This document shows, piece after piece, positions 14,266-59,738 of a stretch of DNA of 64,000 nucleotides. How positions within the stretch are numbered: position 1 is the first letter of the stretch; each line of letters opens with the position of its first letter. Position numbers and translations under genes: made by a program. Where the stretch lies: positions 62,001 to 126,000 of the IMG/VR virus record IMGVR_UViG_3300048591_000147; one strand, given 5' to 3'. The notes beneath the pieces were generated by a model. The model made no database searches, was not told the DNA's origin, and worked only from the letters and a program-made list of their open reading frames with translations.

Positions 14266-14343
14266 GGCTCCGTAGCTTAGCGATCTAAAGCGGGTAATTC
14301 TAAACTACTGTCATCCTCGGTTTGAATCCGAGCGGAGCCACCA
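14266..14343 (+). tRNA. tRNA with CUA anticodon (amber-suppressor-like)
   Basis: GGCTCCG/CGGAGCC acceptor, ACCA end, loop TT-CTA-AA, T arm CTCGG-TTTGAAT-CCGAG. Confidence 0.75.
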
Positions 14344-21556: not shown

Positions 21557-21632
21557 GGCCCGGAAGCTTATTCGGTCAAGCATCGAACTCATAATTCGGA
21601 GAAAGTGGGTTCGAATCCCACACGGGCCACCA
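21557..21632 (+). tRNA. tRNA-CAU (Ile2-like or Met)
   Basis: Cloverleaf with loop CT-CAT-AA; GGCCC acceptor resembles enterobacterial tRNA-Ile2; CCA encoded. Confidence 0.85.
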
Positions 21633-21682
21633 AACTACATGTTGACGGTTACACTAAATAGATGTATGATGGCAACACAACT

Positions 21683-21760
21683 CGGGGATTGGCGCAGTCT
21701 GGCTAGCGCATCTGCTTTGGGAGCAGAGGGTCGTAGGTTCGAATCCTACATTCCCGACCA
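21683..21760 (+). tRNA. tRNA-Pro(UGG)
   Basis: TCTGC-TTTGGGA-GCAGA arm, C1, CCA. Confidence 0.92.
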
Positions 21761-21771
21761 AAATTACATGT

Positions 21772-21848
21772 GCGTCCGTGGCCCGAATGGATTAGGCAAC
21801 GGTCTTCTAAGCCGAACTACGTAGGTTCGAATCCTACCGGGCGCGCCA
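21772..21848 (+). tRNA. tRNA-Arg(UCU)
   Basis: Loop CT-TCT-AA, canonical T arm, CCA. Confidence 0.88.
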
Positions 21849-21853
21849 AATAT

Positions 21854-21930
21854 CTCTCGTTAGCTCAATTGGATAGAGCATCGTCCTTCTAAGACGAGGG
21901 TTACAGGTTCAAATCCTGTACGGGGGGCCA
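21854..21930 (+). tRNA. tRNA-Arg(UCU), second copy
   Basis: TCGTC-CTTCTAA-GACGA arm, CCA. Confidence 0.9.
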
Positions 21931-22064
21931 GTTCTTAGCCAAGGATATAAAATGGAAACCATTAAGCTGATCCTGTCTTCAATCGTAATTCTAATCTTCC
22001 TTGTCCCTTTCTGGTGGACTCTGGTGATTTAATATAAATAGAGGTATTCATAGATGAGTACCTC

Positions 22065-22547
22065 ATGTTCAAATATATTTCAGTAATACTTCTTTCACTA
22101 AGCTTGTTTGCGTGTGCTTCAACAGAAATAAGAGACAAAGCATATCCAACCGCAATAGTCCACAGTACAGAACAAACGGAACAAATCCAACAATCGATAA
22201 AGATAGCATCAAAGAATGACATAGAAACTTCTTTGGGTTTGGTGTTTGATAAAGCTGAATGGACTAGACAAGAAAAAATAGCATTCACATTATCCACGCT
22301 AGCGCACTTAGCCGATCTTGGATCATCTTTGGCTAGTGATGAAAGATGTGAAGAGTCTACACCACTTTTAGGAAAGAATCCAAGTAATGGTGCGCTGATA
22401 GGTGTTAAAGTATTAGCGATAGGATTTGAGTACTGGTTGTATAACAATCCTAGATTCGGTAGTGGTACGCACTTTTATGGCTATACAGCAGCATTGTTCC
22501 ATGGTATAACTGCATATCAAAATAGTAGAAATGATTGTTACGACTAA
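22065..22547 (+). CDS. late-expressed lipoprotein
   Basis: Lipobox LFA-C; TATAAATA at 22033-22040. Confidence 0.7.
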   Translation: MFKYISVILLSLSLFACASTEIRDKAYPTAIVHSTEQTEQIQQSIKIASKNDIETSLGLVFDKAEWTRQEKIAFTLSTLAHLADLGSSLASDERCEESTPLLGKNPSNGALIGVKVLAIGFEYWLYNNPRFGSGTHFYGYTAALFHGITAYQNSRNDCYD

Positions 22548-22659
22548 ATGAGAGATTGACATGGACATTGATGCAGAGTATGATTCAACCTTCAAACAAC
22601 TGATGATCATTACACTAATAGTGCTCATCGCATTCTAATCTAATTTCAGGTAACACAAA

Positions 22660-23175
22660 ATGAACACCAATGTTTACGCAGTTCTGAAGAATGTTGCAAC
22701 CAACAAGACCACTACCGTTCTTGTTCGGAATGGAAAGATTTCTCACCGCCAATGTCACGAAGCTATCAAGCGCGTCAGTAATGGTGATAGCAATCGCTTT
22801 AATATTACCAGCGATAGAACCATCAAGGTGTTGGGATCGACTCTGATCATTACTCCGAATGGACCAACGATTGATAACGTTGATCATATCATTCAGAATT
22901 CCCAGAAGCGTTATACGGTTGTGTACCGTATTGACGAAACCAGTAATAATAACTTCCGAATCAATTATGGTCTGGCATTGACTGCACCTAACGATAATTT
23001 CTCGCGAAAGCTTGGTCGCACTATTGCCACTGGTAGGCTCAATAGTGGTAAGGCTGGAAATGTTTCCAGTATTGAACTCACTGGTGCCAAGATTCCTTCC
23101 AATGGAAAGCAGTGGCATGATCTTGAAAAGTTCATCATGCAAGTGGTAGAATCCAAGCATCGCCGCAAGGGTTGA
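22660..23175 (+). CDS. hypothetical protein
   Basis: 171-aa ORF with a G.AL..P.DNFSRKLGR.IA.GRL segment. Confidence 0.75.
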   Translation: MNTNVYAVLKNVATNKTTTVLVRNGKISHRQCHEAIKRVSNGDSNRFNITSDRTIKVLGSTLIITPNGPTIDNVDHIIQNSQKRYTVVYRIDETSNNNFRINYGLALTAPNDNFSRKLGRTIATGRLNSGKAGNVSSIELTGAKIPSNGKQWHDLEKFIMQVVESKHRRKG

Positions 23176-23372
23176 AATGCTTCAACATCTGGAATGTGAT
23201 TTCAAGATTGGTGAAATGGTGCGCGTGCGAGGTTTAACAGACTTCATGATTGTTAAATCTCTTGCACCTAAACGATCTAATAAGGGCTATACATTCTGGG
23301 AAGTTTATTGCGAAGATGTTGACACTGATGAAGTGAAGATGTATCATGAGTGGCAGATAGTATCTAACGAGG

Positions 23373-23573
23373 ATGATAGCTGATATGAAGAACATTTTGA
23401 TTTTGATCGTGGCTTGTATTGCACTGGTTGGTTGTGGTAAGGCTAGTCGCATGGAAGCAGCACTAACGGGTTATAGTGAAGAATGTGTTGATGGAGTTGT
23501 CTACTTGCAGTTTACATCGGGTGTCACTGTCAAGTATAATCGCGATGGAACACACGCTACCTGTAAAGAATGA
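23373..23573 (+). CDS. small lipoprotein
   Basis: LVG-C lipobox; CVDGVVYLQF...YNRDG motif. Confidence 0.7.
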   Translation: MIADMKNILILIVACIALVGCGKASRMEAALTGYSEECVDGVVYLQFTSGVTVKYNRDGTHATCKE

Positions 23574-23585
23574 GTAGGGATAAAA

Positions 23586-24116
23586 ATGGATCGTATAGTG
23601 CTGACTGCTGATGTGATGGAATCGCTGTATAACGATGACTGGCATATCAATTTTGCTTGCACGAATGATGAATCAGTTCATGGGCTAACTTTAGAAGACA
23701 TTCTAAACATGAGCGATCAGTGGTGGGAACAATGTCATTGCTTCATTCAGATAATTTTCCCCAATCCAATGCCCAGCAAGATGAATCCTGATGCGCCAAT
23801 CATCGAAGACTTCTCAGTGTTTGATGGTGTGCTTAGGTATGAGGTTGCAGTAATGGTTGGAAGGTTCCTCAAGTTCCTTGGTGTGAACATTCGTAAACCA
23901 AAATACAGCAATTATGACAGAGTTGCTGAATGGTTCCGCCCAGATAATCACAACATCCTACGAGTTACAAGGCTGTTGATTTTTCTGAAAGGTGTTGGTA
24001 TGATTGCTGAAATGAACAAGTTGAAAGAGTTTCTGGCAAATTACCAATATGAACTTGCTGATGGTGAATTGCGTAACAGAATGTCATATACAATGACTAT
24101 CTGGCAGAATGTATAA
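23586..24116 (+). CDS. OGFr-like domain protein
   Basis: WEQCHCFIQIIFP, S..NP.AP and NHN.LR.TRLL motifs. Confidence 0.75.
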   Translation: MDRIVLTADVMESLYNDDWHINFACTNDESVHGLTLEDILNMSDQWWEQCHCFIQIIFPNPMPSKMNPDAPIIEDFSVFDGVLRYEVAVMVGRFLKFLGVNIRKPKYSNYDRVAEWFRPDNHNILRVTRLLIFLKGVGMIAEMNKLKEFLANYQYELADGELRNRMSYTMTIWQNV

Positions 24117-24132
24117 ATAGATGTTATGATGT

Positions 24133-24220
24133 GGGCTTGTGGCGAAATTGGTAAACGCGCTAGTCTTAGAAACTAGTCCCTGTAATGGGGTTGTCGGTTC
24201 GAGTCCGACCTAGCCCACCA
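24133..24220 (+). tRNA. tRNA-Leu(UAG)
   Basis: CTAGT-CTTAGAA-ACTAG, long variable arm, CCA; TATAAATA at 24112. Confidence 0.92.
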
Positions 24221-24235
24221 AGAATTGATTTAAAT

Positions 24236-24321
24236 GGGGTTGTGGCGAAATTGGTAGACGCAGCAGACTCAAAATCTGCCGCCCTCTGGGCGTGTCGGTT
24301 CGAGTCCGACCTACCCCACCA
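24236..24321 (+). tRNA. tRNA-Leu(CAA)
   Basis: GCAGA-CTCAAAA-TCTGC, long variable arm, CCA. Confidence 0.92.
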
Positions 24322-24674
24322 AAATAAGAGTATCACAATGCGAAAAATAATGGATCACGTTGATACCTGCAAAGAATGCGGTAGTAAAGAATTAACATGG
24401 TTCACTAGTTTGCAGAATAACGGTAGTGCTGTTGATGGTCGTTTGAAGTTGAATGAGGTTGGCTGTATATTTGTGTTAGGTTGCGACGAATGTTCTGAAA
24501 CCTTACAAATTGTACCCGCTGATCTTGTTGCTTCAGTAATGACAGAAAATCTTCGCTAGATTTTTAGTTGTTGACAAGCACTATATAGTAGTGTATGATT
24601 TAAAAAGTGGTCGAAGTTTAAGGGTTATCTCGCATATAGAAACTAGTCCTTAACGATGTCTTACCACTAAATTT

Positions 24675-24751
24675 GCAGATGTCTTCTAATTGGCTAGGAA
24701 AATTGACTTTCAATCAGTGAAATGACGGTTCGAATCCGTTCATCTGCACCA
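24675..24751 (+). tRNA. tRNA-Glu(UUC)
   Basis: ATTGA-CTTTCAA-TCAGT, CCA. Confidence 0.9.
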
Positions 24752-24768
24752 AAATTTGTAACAAATGT

Positions 24769-24854
24769 GCGCGTATGGCGGAATTGGTAGACGCCCGAGA
24801 CTTAAAATCTTGTTCCCTCTGGGAGTGTCAGTTCGACTCTGACTATGCGCACCA
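24769..24854 (+). tRNA. tRNA-Leu(UAA)
   Basis: Loop CT-TAA-AA, long variable arm, CCA. Confidence 0.9.
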
Positions 24855-24907
24855 AAATTTAGATGTTGACAAACACTAAATAGTACTGTAGAATTTTTAA
24901 GATAGTT

Positions 24908-24992
24908 GGATGTGACGTCACACGGGTAGTGACACCAGTCTGTAAAACTGGCGCCCTCGGGCATATAGGTTCGAGTCCTATGACATCCACCA
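24908..24992 (+). tRNA. tRNA-Tyr(GUA)
   Basis: CCAGT-CTGTAAA-ACTGG, long variable arm, CCA. Confidence 0.88.
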
Positions 24993-25000
24993 GAATGTAA

Positions 25001-25076
25001 GCCCTCTTAGCTCAGAGAAATAGAGCACTCCCGTTCTAGGGAGGGGTCGGTGGTTTAAGTCCATCAGAGGGCGCCA
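25001..25076 (+). tRNA. atypical tRNA with a 6-nt anticodon loop (GTTCTA)
   Basis: Perfect GCCCTCT/AGAGGGC acceptor, D and T arms, CCA; CTCCC/GGGAG encloses only 6 nt. Confidence 0.6.
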
Positions 25077-25297
25077 AAAGTTAAAGTTGTAAGCCGAACG
25101 AGAATAGGTTACCAAACAGAGAGCTAGGACGAGCAACAACAGCGCCTAAAATTGTCTGATACGAACATGCAAATGAGTATCATGTTTCCTTACAAGAATA
25201 TGGAACGTAACCAACAGGACTTAATTGACTTGTGCTGACACGAAAGTTAGCGTCCTATTTTCTTCACCTTGCTTATGATGGTTGTAAAATGAATTAA

Positions 25298-25373
25298 CAG
25301 TGTGTAATGTAGTCTGGTAACATCCAAGCCTTGGACGCTTGTATCGTAGGTTCGAATCCTATCACACTGACCA
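25298..25373 (+). tRNA. tRNA-Pro(UGG), second copy
   Basis: CAAGC-CTTGGAC-GCTTG, CCA. Confidence 0.88.
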
Positions 25374-25562
25374 GTTTGCCAGTATTCTAAAAACTGGACG
25401 TTATAGGTATTACGATACACCTTTCGGGCGGTGCGCTGGACGTTATGCAGTGTGACAATTTTCCGGGCGGTTAGGACAATCCGGTAGCCTCGCTCTAGGC
25501 TAAGATATAACCAACGTACATGGTGAATCTAAAGTTATTAGAAACATGAGTAAAAATTATAT

Positions 25563-25636
25563 GGTCCTGTAACTCAGAGGCAGAGTGTTGGTGTTACATA
25601 CCAAAAGCGAGATTTCGAAATTCTCCGGGACTACCA
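25563..25636 (+). tRNA. tRNA-Val(UAC)
   Basis: TTGGT-GTTACAT-ACCAA, CCA; weak T stem. Confidence 0.75.
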
Positions 25637-25640
25637 AATT

Positions 25641-25759
25641 TATATAAAGTCTATCGGTCTAATTCTGATTCAGCATTACAGATATATCGAAATAGTCTAA
25701 TTAACTATCGATAAAATGCTAGAGGACACATTGACGATGTCTTCGGTAGACTTTATATG
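25641..25759 (+). ncRNA. candidate structured RNA within the tRNA cluster
   Basis: 16-bp closing helix (25641-25656 with 25744-25759) enclosing further hairpins; no ORF. Confidence 0.5.
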
Positions 25760-25813
25760 TTTCTTACGAAACAAGCAACGCAGTTGATATAAATAGATTA
25801 AAATGTATACGAT

Positions 25814-25893
25814 GGGGTATGGGACTGCTGGGGGTGGTCACTTCACTTGCAATGAAGCTAAACAGGAGGGTTCGAATCCCTCATGCTCCACCA
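25814..25893 (+). tRNA. tRNA-Ala(UGC)
   Basis: CTTCA-CTTGCAA-TGAAG; G3:U70 Ala identity pair; CCA. Confidence 0.9.
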
Positions 25894-25903
25894 AGAATAC
25901 TGT

Positions 25904-25981
25904 AGCGGGATAAAATCAGCCCGGAAGATTGGCAGCCTCATAAGCTGTTACGCATTGGTTCAAATCCAATTCCCGCTACCA
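25904..25981 (+). tRNA. tRNA-Met(CAU)
   Basis: GCAGC-CTCATAA-GCTGT, CCA. Confidence 0.85.
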
Positions 25982-26005
25982 ATATTAGTTTCAAAAAGTT
26001 TCAGT

Positions 26006-26082
26006 GGTGGCTATAGTGTAATGGTTTCGCACAAGAGGCTGTGAACCTCTGAGAGAAAGTTCAAATCTTTCTAGTCACACCA
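26006..26082 (+). tRNA. tRNA-His(GUG)
   Basis: AGAGG-CTGTGAA-CCTCT; G-1 present; CCA. Confidence 0.85.
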
Positions 26083-26089
26083 AAATTGC

Positions 26090-26178
26090 GCCGGGGTAGC
26101 CAAGTGGTTGACGGCAATTGATTTGTAATCAATCGGGCTTTACGCCCCTCGCAGGTTCGAATCCTGTCCCCGGCTCCA
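26090..26178 (+). tRNA. tRNA-Tyr(GUA), second copy
   Basis: ATTGA-TTTGTAA-TCAAT, long variable arm, CCA. Confidence 0.9.
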
Positions 26179-26887
26179 ATTCTTTATTTCTAAAGTTATA
26201 AATCTTCATATCTATTCCAAGCAATTTAGCCCGCTTCCTGATAGAATTATCGGACACTCCAAATTTCTTTCCAACTGTGATTACAGGGAACTTAAGTAGT
26301 AGCTGTTCCAATTCTTCTTTAGTTACTGTAAATTTCAATGGTCTTTCATATTTTTCCAGTGGACTTGTTCTTTCATATTTCTTCACTCTCATTTTATTTT
26401 TACCACCCCATGTTTTGGTTTGGCTGTGGCAATTTGGACACAGAAAACATAAATTTTCTATACGATGATCATTAGAAACCCCATTTACGTGTTCTAACTG
26501 AAGTACTATTGGCTTTTCATTGTAAGTATTGATTATACCACAATCTCTGCAAATATATGGGATCAATTTATCAGTGATAACTCTTGCCTTAATGATTCCT
26601 CTAGTAATTTTACTATTGTCATGAAACATAGTTTCTGAACAATGTTTATGTGATGTTATAATATTATTCATATGTCTTTCTTTGTTCAATTTGTAATTAA
26701 TATTAAATTGATCAAGATTTACACTATCTTCTTTGATACGTTCATTCAAGGTAATGTAATTACCTGAAGAATAGCTAGAAAAAATTTTGAGTATGATTTC
26801 TTTATATGAATGATTTTCATCAAACAGTTTTTGAAACTCTTGTCTGCTTAGTTTCCATATTTTTGACCTTTTGACTTTTTGTTTCAT
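26129..26887 (-). CDS. HNH homing endonuclease with C-terminal HTH-like tail
   Basis: LQLEHVNGVSNDHRIENLCFLCPNCHSQT; TATAAATA at 26911-26918 (minus strand) and GGAG RBS. Confidence 0.85.
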   Translation of the reverse strand: MKQKVKRSKIWKLSRQEFQKLFDENHSYKEIILKIFSSYSSGNYITLNERIKEDSVNLDQFNINYKLNKERHMNNIITSHKHCSETMFHDNSKITRGIIKARVITDKLIPYICRDCGIINTYNEKPIVLQLEHVNGVSNDHRIENLCFLCPNCHSQTKTWGGKNKMRVKKYERTSPLEKYERPLKFTVTKEELEQLLLKFPVITVGKKFGVSDNSIRKRAKLLGIDMKIYNFRNKELEPGTGFEPARGVKPD

Positions 26888-28049
26888 TGTGAATTGCTCC
26901 TTGTTTATTCTATTTATAGCTGGTGCAATTCACTGTGCGATATGGTATCATGTTTTTGATAAATATATTTTTCGCAAATAATTAAAACTCTGGCAGGTAA
27001 CGTACCTTACGCCATAAGTGAAAAAACGTAACGGGAGTAGAGTCCTCCTAGCAATTTGCGAATTCTTCTGCTACAATCCCCCCTCCACACAATCAAGAAA
27101 AAGATCATGGAACTACAAATTGGTGATCGTGTAAAATATTATTCCATCACATCCAATTATGTTGGGACGGGTGTCATTGATGAGATTGGTGAAAAGAATG
27201 GCATGGTCGTTTATGACGTGCAACTAGACAACGGCGATCTGCGCTGGGGTTATGTTGATCAATTCAAAAGGGTGTAACCAAATGCCAATCAGAAACAACA
27301 TCAACTTTCTCGTAACCGATATCAAAGCATGTTGCAAGCGAAATAATATAGATATCACGCAGAAAATCGCCATAGCACTCATGGTGGAGTGGCTTGTAAC
27401 TGGTTGTGAACCAGACGATCTGCAAGATGTTTTCACAGAAAATGGTATTATCGATCCACCAAATGTTTGGGATTCTACGCTAGATGTACTCGAATATTTT
27501 GAAAGACTGAATCTCACGGTCCTGATCAAGCATATTGATTATACCAATAAGGGTGTGTCATATGTTAAATTTGATTTGGGTGGTGAACAGGCATATCTAG
27601 ATTTCTATATGACCCCATATCGTTCGGATTTTGTCAACGGATCATATGGTATTCGATTGATCGCAAATACTGATGGTTGGGTTAAAGGGTAATACCTGTT
27701 GACAAGGTTAAGCAGCCCATAGTATAATTGTTTCTCACTAGATTGATGGACCTTAAAATGACTAATGACCCAGTAACCGTAGACCTTGAGTCAACCCTTG
27801 ATTCAATCATGCGTCGAATCGGGGAAATGTCGCACCCAGATTGTTTTGATGACGTCAGGAACGATGCGAAGGAATTCATTGAAGAGGGTTGGTTGCCCAG
27901 TGAAATTGTGGATCATCTTCGTTGCCGTGAAGAAGTTGACAAAGAGCTTGAAGAAGATGTAGCATTGGCACGAATGGCTGTTATTGAGAAACGTGTTGAG
28001 GCACGGTTGCGCGCTGAACGTAATCAGCACTAAATAGGAATACATTTAT

Positions 28050-28138
28050 GGTAGTCTGGCCGTCTGGCTGAAGGCACCCGACTGATAATCGGTGAGTCTA
28101 ACGACTCTAGGTAGGTTCGATCCCTACGGCTACCACCA
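28050..28138 (+). tRNA. tRNA with GAU (Ile) anticodon and long variable arm
   Basis: Loop CT-GAT-AA; variable hairpin GAGTC-TAAC-GACTC; CCA. Confidence 0.8.
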
Positions 28139-44460: not shown

Positions 44461-44782
44461 ACAAATTCAGGAACCATTCAGGTTAGTAATGATAGAATGG
44501 TTTCAACAAATGAGGAAGAGATACCGTAACTTAGATTGTCACCCTCCGGTTGGGTTAACGATGGTTCGATTCCATCTGACAATGTAAGCGCCCACGGGTA
44601 TATGTCTAACGAGGCTCGGACATACCATTTCAGTGCGATGTGACCGTTACACAAAGGTAAGAGAGTTTGGTGAGATTACACCATTCAGGTATGTCTAGTC
44701 ATGCCCCATCGCCCAATTACACTAGGTAAGCCATGGCCATGGTGAAGCCTACACGTAGAGTCATGATCTATGTGGTGTTGCG

Positions 44783-44855
44783 TCCAGATTCTTCTAGTGG
44801 TTAGGAAAGGCCCCCGATTGCGGGCTTAACACAGGTTCGAATCCTGTATCTGGAC
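44783..44855 (+). tRNA. tRNA-like element with 8-nt anticodon loop and no encoded CCA
   Basis: TCCAGAT/ATCTGGA acceptor, AGTGGTT D loop, ACAGG-TTCGAAT-CCTGT T arm. Confidence 0.55.
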
Positions 44856-45215
44856 TAAGTTCTTCAATCAAATCAAGAGGTTATCGTGAAAATTTTTCTG
44901 CAAATATTCTCTGCCGTACTACTGATAATTGCGATAACCGCAGTGAACAAAGCGTTACAGTCGCCTATGAATGGTATGCCTTTTGTAGCTGGTGCATGTG
45001 TCACAGCATTCATCGAAGTATTCCGCGCCTATTGCAGGAAGGATTAACATGAACGTCATCCGCTCAAACCTTGAAACATATTTTTACATGGCTCTGCAAA
45101 CTTCGCGGGAAGTTGATCAACGGATTGGCGAAAACTTCAAGTCCATTCAGACAGCAGCAATCGAAGATACACTGAAAGCCGTCCAAGATGGCGAACAACT
45201 GTGGATTGTAGAATA

Positions 45216-55785: not shown

Positions 55786-56265
55786 GTTGTTGAGATGAAC
55801 TATACCATAGTTACCTGAACACAAGCTGAACAAGACATTCAGGAATCATTCATATTAGTGTGGTATAATGCGCCGAAATCATCAAGTACGCTACAAAGAC
55901 CCGGAGAATACAAATGTCCAATAATTTTGTCTATCGTGTGATGCGCAATGCTGACAGCACCGAAGGTCGTGGCCCCATGATCTATGTCGTCACATTCGAA
56001 ACCTTTGCTGCTGCAAATGCCTACGTCATGCACAAAGGTTCGCCATATGGTCACAAACTCACCGCTTCTCGCAACACAGACGGTGATAAATGGTCGTATG
56101 ATGGGTGGTATGATGTTCACAAGGATGAAGTGTTGCAAGAGTATGACATCGAACAAGTGAAAAAGAACCTAGCAGAATTGAGGCAGATTGAAGAGCGTGC
56201 AGCAGTCTTGCGCGCACTGACCAAGCTGTAATATACTACCAATCCAACATTAGAGAATTACACAA

Positions 56266-57003
56266 ATGAGTGAAATGATCGCCTTTCCATCCATCGAATC
56301 TTTGCGCCATGTTGTCAAAGGCACGGAAATTCGTTGCAAAATCAATAACTTGCAGTTGCCCAAGGTCGAGTACATTGGCACTGTCAAGCTCCATGGCAGC
56401 AATGCGTCTGTGCGATTCACTGCGGATGGCCAGATCATCCCACAATCTCGCAACCGTGTGCTGAGCGTTGGCGATGACAATTTCGGCTTTGCCGCATTCG
56501 TTGAAAAGAACAAACCACTTTTCAAGCATTTCCAAGACATCATTCCCGAAAATGAATTCACAGTTTACGGTGAGTGGTGTGGTGGTAGTGTTCAACCCAA
56601 GGTAGCATTGGAGCAATTGGAAAAGCATTTTGTCATCTTTTCCATCTTGATTGATGGTGTCATGTGCCCAGTGGTGCTGGGTGGTGATGTGTTTGTCTGG
56701 AATGAAGCTGGAATCTGGTGTGTCAGTCAAATTCCAACGTATAAGATCACAGTCGATTTCAGTCGTCCAGAAGATGTGGTTGATGAACTGACCGGTCTTA
56801 CCATCGCTGTAGAAAAGGAATGTCCATGGGGTAAATTCCGTGTGCAGAAGGATTTCAACAATACTTGCACCATTAACAATGGTAATATCACATGGGATAA
56901 TGATATTGCGGATTGCAAACTAAAGGATGAAATAGAATCAAAGATTATCCGATATGTCCAAGCAAATAACTTGCTTAGTAAGAGAATTACCATTTCTGTT
57001 TGA
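56266..57003 (+). CDS. rnlB: RNA ligase 2 family, N-terminal fragment
   Basis: FPSI..LR, motif I KLHGSN, QSRNR, DN.GFA and GEWCG; conserved part ends after ECPWGKF. Confidence 0.8.
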   Translation: MSEMIAFPSIESLRHVVKGTEIRCKINNLQLPKVEYIGTVKLHGSNASVRFTADGQIIPQSRNRVLSVGDDNFGFAAFVEKNKPLFKHFQDIIPENEFTVYGEWCGGSVQPKVALEQLEKHFVIFSILIDGVMCPVVLGGDVFVWNEAGIWCVSQIPTYKITVDFSRPEDVVDELTGLTIAVEKECPWGKFRVQKDFNNTCTINNGNITWDNDIADCKLKDEIESKIIRYVQANNLLSKRITISV

Positions 57004-58006
57004 TAAAGGTATATTCATTATACTGAATTTCATCAGGATGGCGCAACAATCGTTTAATTGTCTTATCATTGGCTCCAAGTTTGGTAAGAAACTTCCCAAT
57101 GCTGATAATGGTAAACTCGCTATTATCAGCATTGTTTTTTACTATGTACTTGTTTGATGATAATGGAGCATATTCACCGCTGACGAATCTATCATCTAAT
57201 ACTGACATGCGACATACTTGATTGTTTATATTTCTAACAGTCATCATTTTCTGGCGCATATTACTCAATTTCTGTTTTGTTTCTTCTGAATGTTTCATGC
57301 CTTTATTATGATGCTTGAATATTTCACTAGAATACTCAGAAGTTTTGATTCTACATTTGTTACCACGCACATCAAATACAGTAACATATCCTTTGGAATG
57401 TCCTACAAGATTAGGATTACTTGCAAATTCAGAATTATTAACCAATATCTTGTTGCCGCTTGTGATATCTAACGCCACAACCTTGTTAGTATTACACGGT
57501 ATCATATATGAACTATCAAAGTCTTCACTCGTTATCTGCCGTATGATACCGTTATTGGTATCGAACACTTTGAATTTACCTTTGGTAATACCAACATACC
57601 CATCCGTAGACTCACCAGTTTTAACTATCTCCGGTTTCATGGTAGTTGTGTTCAACATCAATCGATTATTCTTGTTCCTACTATGCTGAAGACTGCATGA
57701 AAATCCTCTAGAAGTTTGTTTTGCTTTATTATAGAATGATGGGTTAGTATCTACATTGAATCTTTTATGTAAACGAATCTCCAAGTTCAATGCTTTAGTT
57801 TTTTCTGTAGTTGTGTATAGTACAATATATTTGTAGTGTGATCTATTGGTTAATTGATCTTTTACAAATTCTTTGTCCTTGGATGATGAAAAATATTTAA
57901 CTCCCAAGTCATTGACAGGTAACACATTTGATGGTATGCTTCTGTATCCATAGTAATGTTTACCAAGTAATTTATTGGTAATGCGATACACATAATAAAT
58001 TCTCAT
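56987..58006 (-). CDS. GIY-YIG homing endonuclease inserted antisense in the RNA ligase 2 gene
   Basis: YYVYRITN...HYYGYRS, YFSSS, FYN.A and HSEETKQKLS; TATAAATA at 58068-58075 (minus strand). Confidence 0.85.
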   Translation of the reverse strand: MRIYYVYRITNKLLGKHYYGYRSIPSNVLPVNDLGVKYFSSSKDKEFVKDQLTNRSHYKYIVLYTTTEKTKALNLEIRLHKRFNVDTNPSFYNKAKQTSRGFSCSLQHSRNKNNRLMLNTTTMKPEIVKTGESTDGYVGITKGKFKVFDTNNGIIRQITSEDFDSSYMIPCNTNKVVALDITSGNKILVNNSEFASNPNLVGHSKGYVTVFDVRGNKCRIKTSEYSSEIFKHHNKGMKHSEETKQKLSNMRQKMMTVRNINNQVCRMSVLDDRFVSGEYAPLSSNKYIVKNNADNSEFTIISIGKFLTKLGANDKTIKRLLRHPDEIQYNEYTFIKQKW

Positions 58007-58020
58007 CTAGGACTCTCCAT

Positions 58021-58470
58021 ATGCAAATTTGTATAACGAAAATTGATGAAACTCCCGTCAACATACCTATTTATAGCTTTTCCAATTTTATCGGTGAAGG
58101 CATTGTGTGGGCACCAGTGGATAACAGCCTACCATTTGAAATGTGGTTCAAGACCAAGGGCTTGGAGCATAAGAAGGGAGCGAAGGCACCAAAGGTTGAA
58201 GTGGCCCCAGAAGTCATGCAGACGCAACGTGAGCTAGCAGAAAAGCTGTTGCCTGACTGGCGGTTGGAACAAGGTATCAGTGTCCTGCGCGAGCGTGGGT
58301 TGGATATTGAGCCCAAGAATATTGGTGTATATCTACAGTGGATCAGTGAAGACATTCTGAAAGAGGAACAGGATGTGATGGCTGCAAATGGTGTGGAGTG
58401 GAAAAAGATCAATCCTATCGTACTCCAACGTGCTCGCCAGCACATTCTGGAACTCTGTAAGAAGTTCTGA
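58021..58470 (+). CDS. rnlB: RNA ligase 2 family, C-terminal fragment
   Basis: Motifs IV and V: IGEGIVW, WFKTKG; AGGA RBS upstream. Confidence 0.75.
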   Translation: MQICITKIDETPVNIPIYSFSNFIGEGIVWAPVDNSLPFEMWFKTKGLEHKKGAKAPKVEVAPEVMQTQRELAEKLLPDWRLEQGISVLRERGLDIEPKNIGVYLQWISEDILKEEQDVMAANGVEWKKINPIVLQRARQHILELCKKF

Positions 58471-59738
58471 TTCAGCAACCATTCAGGATGGATAGGCTAT
58501 CATGCTATCCATCCTGAACACATAGAGAAATCCGATGTATATCGTACTGGAACGCGAAGTAGATCACGACGGGGAGAGTGGTAACAATCGTTGTCTAGGT
58601 GATACGTTTGGCCCATTTGCCACATATGAGGGGGCGTCAATATTCGCTGACTACAAGTCCGATCTCTCATCCAACAAAACCATTTGTGGTCAACATTACA
58701 TGGACTATTGTGTAATTGAACTGACCCACCCAAAGGTAGACTGAAATGACTGACCTGACCGATCTTGACTATGCTTTCATTCTGTGCTTCAAACAGTGCA
58801 ACCATGACAATGCTACGCTGTTGCGCAGGTTGATGGCTGAACAGGCTGAATGGGCAGGCATACCAGTCAGTTCCATTGGTGTCAATGATGTTGCATACAT
58901 GATCAATGGGACCGTGGCACGTCTAGGGATTCTCAGTGATTATTACAAAATCCATCGCTGGTATGATGGTATGCGAACGGATGCACTGTCCAACCAGATT
59001 TCTGGCTACAATCCCATGAATGCTATCTTTGATGAACTGGAAACGCCAGATCATTATAAGGTATTGGCAGAGTTTTACATTCGCCACATTCTGAGCTTTG
59101 CAGATGCCATCCGATGGACAATGGCCAAAGACATTCCCGGTCTGGCTGAATATCGTGAAGCTCACAAGGAAAAATATCCTATCCGAGCACTTGACAAACT
59201 TGTGGATGCTGATAGTATTACATCACACAAGCAAGAGCAGGCATCATGAAACTCCAACATTGGACCACCTACGAAAGAAAGCCTGCCGTATCTATTGACA
59301 GGGATGATGGTGTGTATGTTACTACCATATACGGCGAAAAAGGTGCCGATGATCTGTTGAAGCTGGCTGCCATCCTGTTGGTTGAACACATGCACGCAAA
59401 TGGAGTAAGATAATGTTTCCACCGATGGTCTTGATAGCTGTTCTTTGTGTCAGTCTATTCTTTCTTGGCGTATGGATGGTAAAGCTCAAGAATGACGATG
59501 GCGCTGAACGGCTGGAATCCAAAAACGTAATTTTATTCTCCGCACCACTGTTGTTTTTCTGCAACGGTGGTGTTGTTTTTATGCCACACCAACAAAATAA
59601 TACCACATTTCTGAGACAATTGCTTTAACAATCAATGACATAGCATCACAAAACATCTGCAATATTGTTGTTGACAGTGCTCTGTAATGGTGTATAATAC
59701 ATTACATCAACCAGCAACTACACTCAAAGGACCAGACG

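What the first reader, a model, noticed from the sequence alone, without database searches (positions are those of the whole stretch)
56266..58470. RNA ligase 2 gene in pieces, split by an antisense GIY-YIG element that supplies the restart
Seen: motifs I-III lie in 56266..57003 and motifs IV-V (EGIVW, FKTKG) in 58021..58470. About 1.24 kb between ECPWGKF and IGEGIVW carries the endonuclease on the opposite strand. The endonuclease's late promoter (58068-58075) lies inside the 23-aa non-ligase leader of fragment 2, and the two divergent start codons are 14 nt apart with back-to-back RBSs. No group I core is visible. Established: Aeromonas phage Aeh1 nrdA is split by mobE yet works as two polypeptides. 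Inference: a split nucleotidyltransferase active site assembled in trans, which I do not know of for RNA ligases.
Basis: partly seen in the sequence, partly recalled or inferred. Interest (0 to 1): 0.75.

Follow-up and report, generated by a model that had tools for sequence, protein, structure and literature searches.

The report
Phage RNA ligase split by endonuclease cassette
A giant phage carries its RNA ligase 2 gene in two pieces, separated by a mobile endonuclease cassette that also adds a protein tail to the first piece and a leader to the second; the sequence evidence says both pieces are still in use, a second natural case of the kind known from the split ribonucleotide reductase of phage Aeh1.

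Summary
Fragment 1 (56266..57003) carries ligase motifs I, III and IIIa. Fragment 2 (58021..58470) carries motifs IV and V and the Rnl2 C-terminal domain. An antisense GIY-YIG-type endonuclease gene (58006..56987) lies between them.

- **Mobile cassette.** Metagenome contigs from relatives about 90% identical hold the uninterrupted allele (..CPWGKFR-GVSG-IGEGIVW..). About 1246 nt of AT-rich DNA therefore replaces about 10 nt.
- **No splicing signature.** No intron or intein signature was found.
- **Selection.** Against a relative with the same split (dS about 1), every part is under purifying selection. This includes the 53-aa non-ligase tail (omega 0.20) and the 23-aa leader (0.15).
- **Recurrence.** The same architecture turned up in 11 further loci from metagenome and other public assemblies: two or three insertion sites, GIY-YIG or HNH endonucleases, either orientation. 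It is scattered across the ligase tree.
- **Complex model.** It joins the two pieces (ipSAE 0.87, best control 0.00), and the tail end and the leader lie in the interface.

Most likely this is a working two-piece ligase held together by cassette-borne adaptors. It is the Aeh1 NrdA/mobE principle in a new enzyme, here as a recurrent family. No biochemistry was done.

The parts
56266..57003 (+). Fragment 1 ORF (245 aa). Rnl2 nucleotidyltransferase core, residues 1-192, followed by a non-ligase tail. K41 (motif I, nt 56386-56403), YGEW (motif III, about 56554-56580), FVIFSIL (motif IIIa, about 56626-56652).
   Evidence: AF2 model pLDDT 91.7. Best structural match T4 Rnl2: model residues 3-198 to chain residues 1-182, Z 11.9.
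56842..57000 (+). Tail of fragment 1 (residues 193-245, 53 aa), absent from intact homologues. Predicted beta-hairpin 199-210, helix 218-233 and final strand 240-243.
   Evidence: Homology to the intact allele ends at 56842. Omega 0.20, p 5e-5. A profile of 12 other tails finds it at E 0.001-0.0001 among 1151 decoys. Residues 239-245 lie in the predicted interface.
56843..58088 (.). Inserted cassette, about 1246 nt, GC 31-35% against 44-48% in the flanks. It replaces about 10 nt (the GVSG codons) of the uninterrupted allele.
   Evidence: Joined contigs in runs X3 and X7. Composition.
56987..58006 (-). Free-standing homing-endonuclease gene (339 aa). GIY-YIG-type N-terminal domain (YYVYRI...KHYYGYRS) with a NUMOD3-like element. 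Convergent with fragment 1 and overlapping its end by 17 nt.
   Evidence: PHROG 314 E 1e-10. N-terminal 107 aa about 50% identical to T4-like phage proteins annotated as homing endonuclease or GIY-YIG. NUMOD3 18.3 bits, below the cut-off. Omega 0.12.
57097..57134 (+). Strong hairpin followed by a T run, 94 nt after the fragment 1 stop and inside the endonuclease ORF. Possibly a terminator or insulator for the fragment 1 transcript.
   Evidence: RNA fold -22.6 kcal/mol, z -6.8. Both arms identical in L003 while the loop differs, although the surrounding gene is only 76% identical. Function is inferred.
57912..57940 (+). Sigma-70-like promoter match (TTGACA, 17 nt, TATGCT with an upstream TG), about 80 nt before the fragment 2 start. 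A candidate cassette-borne promoter for fragment 2.
   Evidence: the scan as a whole is not enriched over shuffles. Both hexamers conserved in L003. Weak evidence.
58007..58020 (.). 14-nt divergent spacer with two ribosome-binding sites: AGGA 58009-58012 (+) and GGAG 58019-58016 (-).
   Evidence: Read from the sequence. 20 nt around the fragment 2 ATG are identical in L003.
58068..58075 (-). TATAAATA (T4-type late-promoter consensus), 62 nt upstream of the endonuclease ATG and within the leader codons of fragment 2.
   Evidence: L003 has CATAAATA at this position. Promoter function is inferred.
58021..58089 (+). Leader of fragment 2 (residues 1-23), absent from intact homologues. Predicted beta-hairpin (strands 2-8 and 11-24).
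   Evidence: Homology to the intact allele resumes at 58089/58090. Omega 0.15, p 0.002. A similar M-x-I-x-I/W...G-x-I-x-F pattern in nine other loci. Residues 1-9 lie in the predicted interface. AF2.
58021..58470 (+). Fragment 2 ORF (149 aa). After the leader come motif IV GEGIVW (58093-58110), motif V WFKTKG (58144-58161) and the helical Rnl2 C-terminal domain.
   Evidence: Profile to T4 Rnl2 204-331, E 1.4e-4. Residues 61-149 to T4 Rnl2 247-332, Z 7.2, top hit. Omega 0.09.

Best explanation
A mobile cassette has entered the RNA ligase 2 gene of this 315-kb phage, in the loop just before motif IV. The cassette holds three things:
- a free-standing GIY-YIG-type homing-endonuclease gene on the opposite strand;
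- about 160 nt that extend fragment 1 by a 53-aa tail and then stop it;
- about 85 nt that give fragment 2 its own ribosome-binding site, ATG and 23-aa leader.

**Shown**
- The insertion is a presence/absence polymorphism among close relatives.
- The cassette differs in base composition from its flanks.
- There is no intron or intein signature.
- Both ligase fragments, the tail and the leader all evolve under purifying selection.
- The same tail, endonuclease and leader architecture recurs in many distantly related rnl2 genes.

**Inferred**
- The endonuclease cuts uninterrupted alleles near the motif IV codons, and repair copies the whole cassette (homing).
- The two polypeptides are translated separately and associate non-covalently to rebuild one nucleotidyltransferase domain. 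The lysine nucleophile and motifs III/IIIa come from fragment 1. Motifs IV/V and the C-terminal domain come from fragment 2.
- The final strand of the tail and the beta-hairpin of the leader act as cassette-supplied adaptors that stabilise the assembly. This makes the insertion nearly harmless to the phage.
For: **Two halves of one ligase**
- The ORFs match abutting halves of one RNA ligase profile and of T4 Rnl2.

**The uninterrupted allele exists**
- Contigs from runs X7 (1002 nt) and X3 (302 nt) hold the uninterrupted allele. Both read in frame ..CPWG(K/R)FR-GVSG-IGEGIVW.., which matches the family consensus. Their flanks are 84-93% identical to the window.
- The endonuclease-bearing form is seen in runs X1 and X2.
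- The cassette GC is 31-35% against 44-48% in the flanks.

**Selection, window against L003 (88% identical fragment 2, same split),**

| Part | omega | Fisher p |
|---|---|---|
| Fragment 1 core | 0.14 | 2.4e-17 |
| Tail | 0.20 | 5e-5 |
| Endonuclease | 0.12 | 2.5e-40 |
| Leader | 0.15 | 0.002 |
| Fragment 2 core | 0.09 | 2.2e-17 |

- dS is 0.83-1.37 in every part. The cassette is therefore as old as the divergence of the two lineages.

**Recurrence**
- Eleven further loci have the same architecture. Ligase identity to the window falls to 28-38%.
- About 17 of the best 150 cluster representatives are tail-bearing fragment 1 proteins.

**Tails are related**
- The window tail is recognised by a profile built from the other tails (E 1e-3 to 1e-4, rank 1 of 1151).

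**Catalytic residues**
- They are intact: K41 and E103 on fragment 1; E26, K44 and K46 on fragment 2. E103, E26, K44 and K46 are invariant columns and K41 is nearly invariant in the family alignments.

**Complex model**
- ipSAE 0.87 (three runs: 0.85-0.88) against a best control of 0.00. That mark was reached by 58 of 80 solved complexes and by 2 of 110 mismatched pairs; the counts hold only roughly because my own alignments were used.
- The interface includes tail residues 239-245 and leader residues 1-9.

**Precedent**
- The mobE-derived tails of Aeh1 NrdA-a/NrdA-b are essential for activity (PMC3045599).
Against: - There is no transcript, protein or activity data. The phage is uncultured.
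- The read evidence is from assembled contigs of other strains, not reads of this phage.
- A complex model of two halves of a known single-chain fold can score high from memory of the intact fold.
- The genome encodes three other ligases: a 210-aa minimal RNA ligase, a 437-aa Rnl5-like ligase and an NAD-dependent DNA ligase. Loss of Rnl2 might therefore be tolerated.
- If window and L003 acquired diverged cassettes independently, part of the low omega of the ligase cores would predate the split. This does not apply to the tail and leader.
- Homology among tails can be shown for only about half of them. No charge complementarity of the Aeh1 kind is seen.
- The hairpin with a T run after fragment 1 could terminate transcription. 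Fragment 2 would then depend on an unproven internal promoter.
Confidence: 0.7

Rival explanations
1. The ligase gene was killed by the insertion. The two ORFs are decaying remnants, tolerated because the phage has other ligases.
For: Three other ligase genes lie in the same genome. There is no expression or activity evidence.
Against: Both fragments keep open frames and all catalytic residues. Omega is 0.09-0.14 over dS of about 1 against a relative with the same split. The inserted tail and leader are themselves under purifying selection. In all 10 loci where the contig reaches both fragments, the two frames are open, at ligase identities down to 28%.
Confidence: 0.1
2. A single polypeptide or mRNA is restored by splicing. 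Either the 1.25-kb insert is a self-splicing intron with an antisense endonuclease gene, or the tail and leader are halves of a split intein (a 'fractured gene').
For: Both arrangements are known around homing endonucleases in phage genes (PMC2677866). One joined contig comes from an RNA library (X7).
Against: - No group I or II intron match at E up to 10.
- The joined contigs differ from the window by 7-16% in the flanks and contain 10-22 nt that the window lacks, so they are other alleles. One is from a run typed as DNA.
- The tail and leader show protein-level constraint, which an intron would not.
- There are no Hint or intein Pfam hits. At 53 + 23 aa the pair is about half the size of the smallest inteins. 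No conserved Cys/Ser/Thr follows the leader, and no terminal Asn is present in the nine aligned leaders.
Confidence: 0.05
3. Both fragments are made and kept, but not as a reassembled ligase. For example, fragment 2 serves as a separate RNA-binding protein, or fragment 1 serves as a nucleotide-binding protein with a new role.
For: Purifying selection shows constraint, not which function is constrained. AF2 folds each fragment confidently on its own (pLDDT 91.7 and 87.7).
Against: The residues kept invariant are exactly the ligase catalytic residues of each half. The fragments always occur as an adjacent pair. The complex model is confident and rebuilds the domain.
Confidence: 0.1
4. The split is an artefact: a chimeric metagenome assembly or a sequencing error.
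For: The genome is a metagenome assembly.
Against: The same junctions are seen in independent assemblies and runs (L003; X1 and X2 contigs). A 98% identical fragment 1 end with the tail also exists (P0009).
Confidence: 0.01

Closest known systems
Aeromonas phage Aeh1 nrdA-a / mobE / nrdA-b (Friedrich et al. 2007; Crona et al. 2010, PMC3045599)
   Same: A free-standing homing endonuclease splits an enzyme gene within the active-site fold. The two polypeptides are translated separately. [quoted passage not shown] The cassette is compositionally distinct. In Aeh1 the tails are experimentally essential.
   Different: - The host enzyme here is a covalent nucleotidyltransferase (Rnl2), not a ribonucleotide reductase.
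- The endonuclease is GIY-YIG-type and antisense, with its own promoter-like motif. In Aeh1 it is an HNH gene in the sense orientation within an operon.
- The tails here show no opposite charges and are predicted to be beta-strand adaptors.
- The arrangement is a recurrent family (12 loci including the window; about 17 of the 150 best cluster representatives), not a single case.
- No biochemistry exists here.
Fractured genes with split inteins and a free-standing endonuclease in between (Dassa et al. 2009, PMC2677866)
   Same: The layout is the same: host N-part plus extension, then an endonuclease gene (GIY-YIG in some), then an extension plus host C-part. They occur in phage-like DNA/RNA metabolism genes from metagenomes, and the extensions are brought in with the element.
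   Different: The extensions here are far too short (53 + 23 aa) and lack intein motifs and splice-junction residues. Assembly would be non-covalent.
T4 gene 39/60 split by mobA, and gp43 DNA polymerase split in T4-related phages (cited in PMC3045599 and PMC2677866)
   Same: Phage enzyme genes broken into two ORFs in association with homing endonucleases, and working as multi-subunit enzymes.
   Different: Different enzymes. Conserved, portable tails have not been described for them.
T4 RNA ligase 2 (PDB 1S68, 2HVQ)
   Same: Best sequence and structure match for both fragments. The motif set is the same: I, III, IIIa on one fragment and IV, V on the other. The helical C-terminal domain is also shared.
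   Different: T4 Rnl2 is one polypeptide. Identity is below 20%. The window protein belongs to a distinct subfamily (consensus ..ECPxGKxFGVSGIGEGIVW..) whose nearest cultured members are intact genes, 38-45% identical, in Stenotrophomonas, Xanthomonas and Ralstonia jumbo phages.

Membership tests
Rnl2-type ATP-dependent RNA ligase (covalent nucleotidyltransferase superfamily) | Motif I with the lysine nucleophile (KxxG) | tested here: met
   K41 in VKLHGSN aligns to T4 Rnl2 KIHGTN. The column is nearly invariant in the 56-row family alignment.
Rnl2-type ATP-dependent RNA ligase (covalent nucleotidyltransferase superfamily) | Motifs III and IIIa | tested here: met
   YGEW (E103 invariant) and FVIFSIL (F125 invariant) align to T4 Rnl2 FGEF and FYVFDI.
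Rnl2-type ATP-dependent RNA ligase (covalent nucleotidyltransferase superfamily) | Motifs IV (EG) and V (KxK) | tested here: met
   They lie on fragment 2. E26-G27, K44 and K46 are invariant. The profile aligns them to T4 Rnl2 E204 and K225/K227.
Rnl2-type ATP-dependent RNA ligase (covalent nucleotidyltransferase superfamily) | Rnl2-specific all-helical C-terminal domain | tested here: met
   The profile match extends to T4 Rnl2 residue 331 (E 1.4e-4). Model residues 61-149 match T4 Rnl2 247-332 best (Z 7.2, modest). There is no Pfam T4_Rnl2_C hit at E 0.1.
Rnl2-type ATP-dependent RNA ligase (covalent nucleotidyltransferase superfamily) | All motifs on one polypeptide | tested here: not met
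   There are two ORFs, separated by 1017 nt that carry an antisense gene.
Rnl2-type ATP-dependent RNA ligase (covalent nucleotidyltransferase superfamily) | Ligase-AMP formation and nick sealing | not testable with these tools
   Needs expression and assay of the two fragments.
Free-standing GIY-YIG homing endonuclease | GIY-YIG catalytic domain | tested here: inconclusive
   There is no Pfam GIY-YIG hit. The N-terminus reads YYVYRI..(10)..YYGYRS. It is about 50% identical over 107 aa to T4-like phage proteins annotated as homing endonuclease or GIY-YIG domain protein. PHROG 314 'homing endonuclease' matches at E 1e-10.
Free-standing GIY-YIG homing endonuclease | Modular DNA-binding region (NUMOD motifs) | tested here: inconclusive
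   NUMOD3 scores 18.3 bits against a cut-off of 20.4.
Free-standing GIY-YIG homing endonuclease | Presence/absence polymorphism at one site of a conserved host gene, with sporadic distribution | tested here: met
   Alleles without the endonuclease in runs X7 and X3, and alleles with it in X1 and X2. On the ligase tree, 19 split rows need 17 changes, which is no fewer than shuffled labels need. Four well-supported split/intact sister pairs are present.
Free-standing GIY-YIG homing endonuclease | Cleavage of the allele that lacks the endonuclease gene | not testable with these tools
   Needs an in vitro cleavage assay on the uninterrupted junction.
Endonuclease-fragmented gene reassembled by element-derived tails (Aeh1 NrdA type) | Host gene cut into two ORFs by a free-standing endonuclease gene, with no splicing element | tested here: met
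Endonuclease-fragmented gene reassembled by element-derived tails (Aeh1 NrdA type) | C- and N-terminal extensions absent from uninterrupted homologues | tested here: met
   Tail residues 193-245 and leader residues 1-23 have no counterpart in the intact allele or in the 127 intact representatives examined.
Endonuclease-fragmented gene reassembled by element-derived tails (Aeh1 NrdA type) | Tails required for assembly or activity | not testable with these tools
   Only indirect support: purifying selection on the tails and their presence in the predicted interface.
Endonuclease-fragmented gene reassembled by element-derived tails (Aeh1 NrdA type) | Oppositely charged tails (proposed for Aeh1) | tested here: not met
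   Net charges are +1 and -1 in the window. There is no consistent pattern across nine tail/leader pairs.
Fractured gene with split intein | N- and C-intein halves with Hint motifs and nucleophilic junction residues | tested here: not met
   No Pfam intein or Hint hit. The extensions are 53 + 23 aa. The junction residues are not conserved Cys/Ser/Thr or Asn.
Group I or II intron carrying an endonuclease gene | Conserved intron RNA core | tested here: not met
   cmscan of 56000-58700 at E up to 10 gives no intron family.

The most novel reading that the evidence does not exclude
The tail and leader are not accidental by-products of one insertion. They are a portable protein-assembly module that travels with homing-endonuclease cassettes. 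It is a non-splicing functional counterpart of a split intein. It is found with both GIY-YIG and HNH endonucleases, in either orientation, and at two or three different sites of rnl2. It lets the element cut an enzyme's catalytic domain in two without killing it.
Probability: 0.35. Interest if true: 0.8.

Novelty: new variant of a known kind. Interest (0 to 1): 0.62.

Why it matters
Crona et al. (2010) proposed that element-derived tails might be a general way to neutralise gene fragmentation by mobile elements. They had a single case.

This is a second enzyme class with the same solution. It occurs as a family with many diverged members, several insertion sites and two endonuclease families. 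That makes comparative and experimental tests possible:
- Are the tails necessary?
- Are they interchangeable between cassettes?
- Can they reassemble other split proteins?

It would also be the first natural two-piece covalent nucleotidyltransferase that I could find in the searched literature. It may also offer small natural non-covalent split-protein adaptors for protein engineering.

Tried and rejected
1. **Close relatives in phage collections.**
   - Megablast against phage records found nothing.
   - Pattern scans of IMG/VR found no close relative.
2. **Tail as a decayed copy of the motif IV-V region (NGNITW..CKLK against GEGIVW..FKTK).** Rejected.
   - hhalign of the tails against intact ligases gives E 0.3-0.4.
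   - The structural alignment to T4 Rnl2 stops at residue 198.
3. **Homology of site A tails with site A' and site B tails.** Only weak (hhalign E 0.005 over 25 columns; HMM not significant). It is left open.
4. **Leave-one-out tail profiles.** Significant for window/L003, P0010, P0011 and P0095. P0137 ranks first but at E 0.22. The other seven are not significant.
5. **A split locus that has lost its endonuclease.** None among the 12 loci.
6. **Cultured phages with the split form.**
   - None in the listed hits.
   - Vibrio phage Pontus is intact.
   - The two-gene call in Xoo-sp13 is an annotation issue.
7. **The conserved hairpin in other loci.** Not found.
8. **ESM Atlas look-alikes of the tail.** Only short, non-specific matches to ATP-grasp and TonB_C.
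9. **Literature on a split RNA ligase 2.** None found in the held library.
Full report
**What is there**

The window is bases 62001-126000 of a 314,956-bp virus record with direct terminal repeats. Three ORFs occupy the flagged interval:
- 56266..57003 on the + strand (245 aa);
- 58006..56987 on the - strand (339 aa);
- 58021..58470 on the + strand (149 aa).

The two + strand ORFs match the PHROG 548 'RNA ligase' profile (341 positions). The first matches positions 2-198 through its residues 3-192. The second matches positions 202-339 through its residues 22-146. They are the two abutting halves of one gene.

Several results tie both halves to T4 Rnl2:
- Pfam RNA_ligase hits fragment 1.
- Fragment 1 residues 25-130 align to T4 Rnl2 residues 19-124 (motifs I, III, IIIa).
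- A profile of the fragment 2 family aligns to T4 Rnl2 residues 204-331 (motifs IV, V and the C-terminal domain; E 1.4e-4).
- AlphaFold models of each fragment are confident (pLDDT 91.7 and 87.7).
- Both models match T4 Rnl2 best. Fragment 1 residues 3-198 align to chain residues 1-182 (Z 11.9). Fragment 2 residues 61-149 align to residues 247-332 (Z 7.2).

Residues 193-245 of fragment 1 (the tail) and 1-23 of fragment 2 (the leader) have no counterpart in ligases.

The antisense ORF is a homing-endonuclease gene:
- PHROG 314 matches at E 1e-10.
- Its first 107 residues are about 50% identical to T4-like phage proteins annotated as homing endonuclease or GIY-YIG domain protein.
- There is a sub-threshold NUMOD3 hit.
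- Pfam's GIY-YIG model does not match, so that assignment rests on the relatives and on the visible YYVYRI...YYGYRS motif.

- The divergent ATGs are 14 nt apart, and each has a Shine-Dalgarno-like element 8 nt upstream.
- TATAAATA lies on the - strand at 58075..58068, inside the leader codons. The motif is enriched in the window (10 against 3.2 expected). Nine of the 10 copies lie 22-88 nt upstream of a same-strand ATG ORF. A T4-like late promoter is therefore plausible but not shown.
- Rfam finds no intron.

**The insert is a mobile cassette**

Assembled contigs of four wastewater and sludge runs were laid on 55900-58800. Two contigs were joined across the insert.
- Run X7 comes from an RNA library. 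Its 1002-nt contig covers 56327-56831, then 22 other letters, then 58090-58555.
- Run X3 is typed as DNA. Its 302-nt contig covers 56782-56842, then 10 letters, then 58089-58173.
- Both read in frame as ..CPWG(K/R)FR-GVSG-IGEGIVW... This is the consensus of intact family members.
- Their flanks differ from the window by 7-16%. They are therefore uninterrupted alleles of related strains, not spliced or excised products of this genome.
- Contigs of runs X1 and X2 carry the endonuclease/leader junction at about 95% identity.

So about 1246 nt (56843-58088) replace about 10 nt. The cassette is AT-rich (GC 31-35% against 44-48% in the flanks).

**The split is kept by selection**

The closest relative with sequence in hand is L003, whose fragment 2 is 88% identical. 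It has the same three ORFs. Nei-Gojobori estimates, window against L003:

| Part | omega | dS |
|---|---|---|
| Fragment 1 core | 0.14 | 1.37 |
| Tail | 0.20 | 0.94 |
| Endonuclease | 0.12 | 1.33 |
| Leader | 0.15 | 1.09 |
| Fragment 2 core | 0.09 | 0.83 |

The excess of synonymous change is significant even for the tail (p 5e-5) and the leader (p 0.002). The cassette is as diverged as its flanks, so it predates the split of these two lineages. The tail and leader are constrained as protein, which only makes sense if the chimeric polypeptides are made and used.

**The architecture recurs**

A full HMMER search with fragment 1 found 2682 relatives. The best is an intact 320-aa ligase, 63% identical (P0008). 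Among the 150 best cluster representatives, about 17 are truncated after the ligase core and carry a non-ligase tail of 46-71 aa. The junctions fall at three places:
- after CPxGKF (site A, as in the window);
- five residues later, after FGVSG (site A');
- after motif V, KGERH (site B).

The contigs show the same layout everywhere.

| Locus | Site | Endonuclease | Orientation |
|---|---|---|---|
| L003, L004 | A | GIY-YIG | antisense |
| L006 | A | GIY-YIG, catalytic domain frameshifted | antisense |
| L007, L023, L025 | A | HNH + NUMOD3 | antisense |
| L008, L011 | B | HNH-like motif read by eye (no Pfam hit) | antisense |
| L020, L021 | A | HNH | sense |
| L013 | A | GIY-YIG-like | sense |

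- In all 10 loci where the contig reaches both fragments, both are open. Ligase identity to the window falls to 28-38%.
- No split locus without an endonuclease gene was found.
- On a tree of the N-terminal cores (146 rows), the 19 split rows need 17 changes. Label shuffles need 15-19.
- Four split/intact sister pairs have SH-aLRT support of 95 or more: window + P0008, P0011 + P0017, P0066 + P0157 and P0025 + P0079.
- The tree is a quick one with many weak branches. The well-supported pairs alone still require repeated gain or loss, as expected for a homing element.

**Tails and leaders**

Tails share a beta-hairpin, a helix of about 15 residues and a final beta-strand (AF2 strands 199-204 and 207-210, helix 218-233, strand 240-243). 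Leaders share a beta-hairpin that runs into motif IV.

How far sequence homology among tails can be shown:
- The window tail is the top hit of a profile built from 12 other tails (E 0.0011 against 1151 six-frame decoys; 8e-5 in the leave-one-out run).
- P0010, P0011 (L006) and P0095 (L007, an HNH cassette) also pass.
- Seven others do not pass. Site A' and site B tails are not significantly similar.
- Whether all tails descend from one module or converged on one solution is therefore open.

They are not decayed copies of the ligase's own motif IV-V region. They carry no consistent opposite charges. They show no intein features.

**Assembly**

A complex prediction with family alignments gave ipSAE 0.87 (three runs: 0.85, 0.87, 0.88) against 0.00 for the best of three controls. 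That mark was reached by 58 of 80 solved complexes and by 2 of 110 mismatched pairs. These counts hold only roughly, because my own alignments were used.

The confident interface includes tail residues 193-200, 222-236 and 239-245, and leader residues 1-9 and 15-35. Pairing of the last tail strand with the leader hairpin is my inference, because the contacts are not given as pairs. The two chains are halves of a known fold, so part of the score may come from memory of intact ligases.

**Expression signals**

- A 16-bp hairpin followed by a T run lies 94 nt after the fragment 1 stop (57097-57134; -22.6 kcal/mol, z -6.8). Its arms are identical in L003 while the loop differs. It may end the fragment 1 transcript before it runs antisense through the endonuclease gene.
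- A TTGACA, 17 nt, TATGCT match at 57912-57940 is conserved in L003 and could drive fragment 2.
- Both are consensus matches. Their function is inferred.

**Comparison with what is known**

- The nearest precedent is Aeh1 nrdA split by mobE. Tails that came with the insertion are essential for activity, and the authors predicted similar tails elsewhere (PMC3045599).
- Fractured genes with split inteins have the same layout but use protein splicing (PMC2677866).
- I found no report of a split RNA ligase 2 in the held library.
- None of the listed cultured-phage records has the split form.

**Caveats**

- There is no experimental evidence of expression or activity.
- The genome has three other ligases, so Rnl2 may be dispensable.
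- The read evidence comes from assembled contigs of related strains.
- The typing of X3 as DNA is the tool's guess.

**Verdict**

This is a new variant of a known kind. It matters mainly because it turns a one-off (Aeh1 NrdA) into a recurrent family that can be tested.

Noticed in passing
window 14266-14343; 21557-28138; 44782-44856: There are 19 tRNA genes, most in a cluster at 21.5-28.1 kb. One has a CUA anticodon, which ARAGORN calls 'Pyl' (an amber-suppressor type). One has an odd two-base anticodon call, and one is tRNA-Asn(AUU). The stops of the three ORFs studied are TGA, TAA and TGA, so amber read-through does not affect them.
   Followed up: partly
window, 10 sites (220, 3247, 22033, 24112, 25788, 26918, 28167, 34982, 38796, 58075): TATAAATA occurs 10 times against 3.2 expected. 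Nine sites lie 22-88 nt upstream of a same-strand ATG ORF, and five lie at 22-25 nt. This suggests T4-type late promoters in this jumbo phage.
   Followed up: partly
window 57097-57134: A 16-bp hairpin lies inside the endonuclease ORF. Its arms are identical in L003 although the gene is only 76% identical, and the loop has changed. This points to selection on the structure. No counterpart was found in five other loci.
   Followed up: partly
L014 768-2025 (G000:C1 about 280.8-282.1 kb); L016 907-2220; L017 1225-2340: The same genome encodes three other ligases. One is a 210-aa minimal RNA ligase that sits next to an antisense 180-aa Cys/His-rich ORF with an HNH-like motif, read by eye. One is a 437-aa Rnl5-like ligase with an N-terminal OB domain. 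One is a short (371 aa) NAD-dependent DNA ligase.
   Followed up: partly
L006 4800-5200: In this relative, the GIY-YIG domain of the intervening endonuclease is broken by a frameshift, while both ligase fragments stay open. This is either a decaying endonuclease or an assembly error. The same contig also carries a T4 Rnl1-type ligase and an HNH gene.
   Followed up: partly
L007 100-837; L008 1637-2068 and 7617-8054: The neighbourhoods of split ligases in relatives hold other RNA-repair or RNA-modification genes: a Thg1-like protein, a Macro domain protein and a PNKP-type HAD phosphatase.
   Followed up: no
L019 871-1917 (Xanthomonas phage Xoo-sp13, MN047793.1): The intact rnl2 homologue of this cultured jumbo phage appears mis-annotated. 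An antisense 'hypothetical protein' CDS covers its 5' half, and a shorter + strand CDS covers its 3' half.
   Followed up: no
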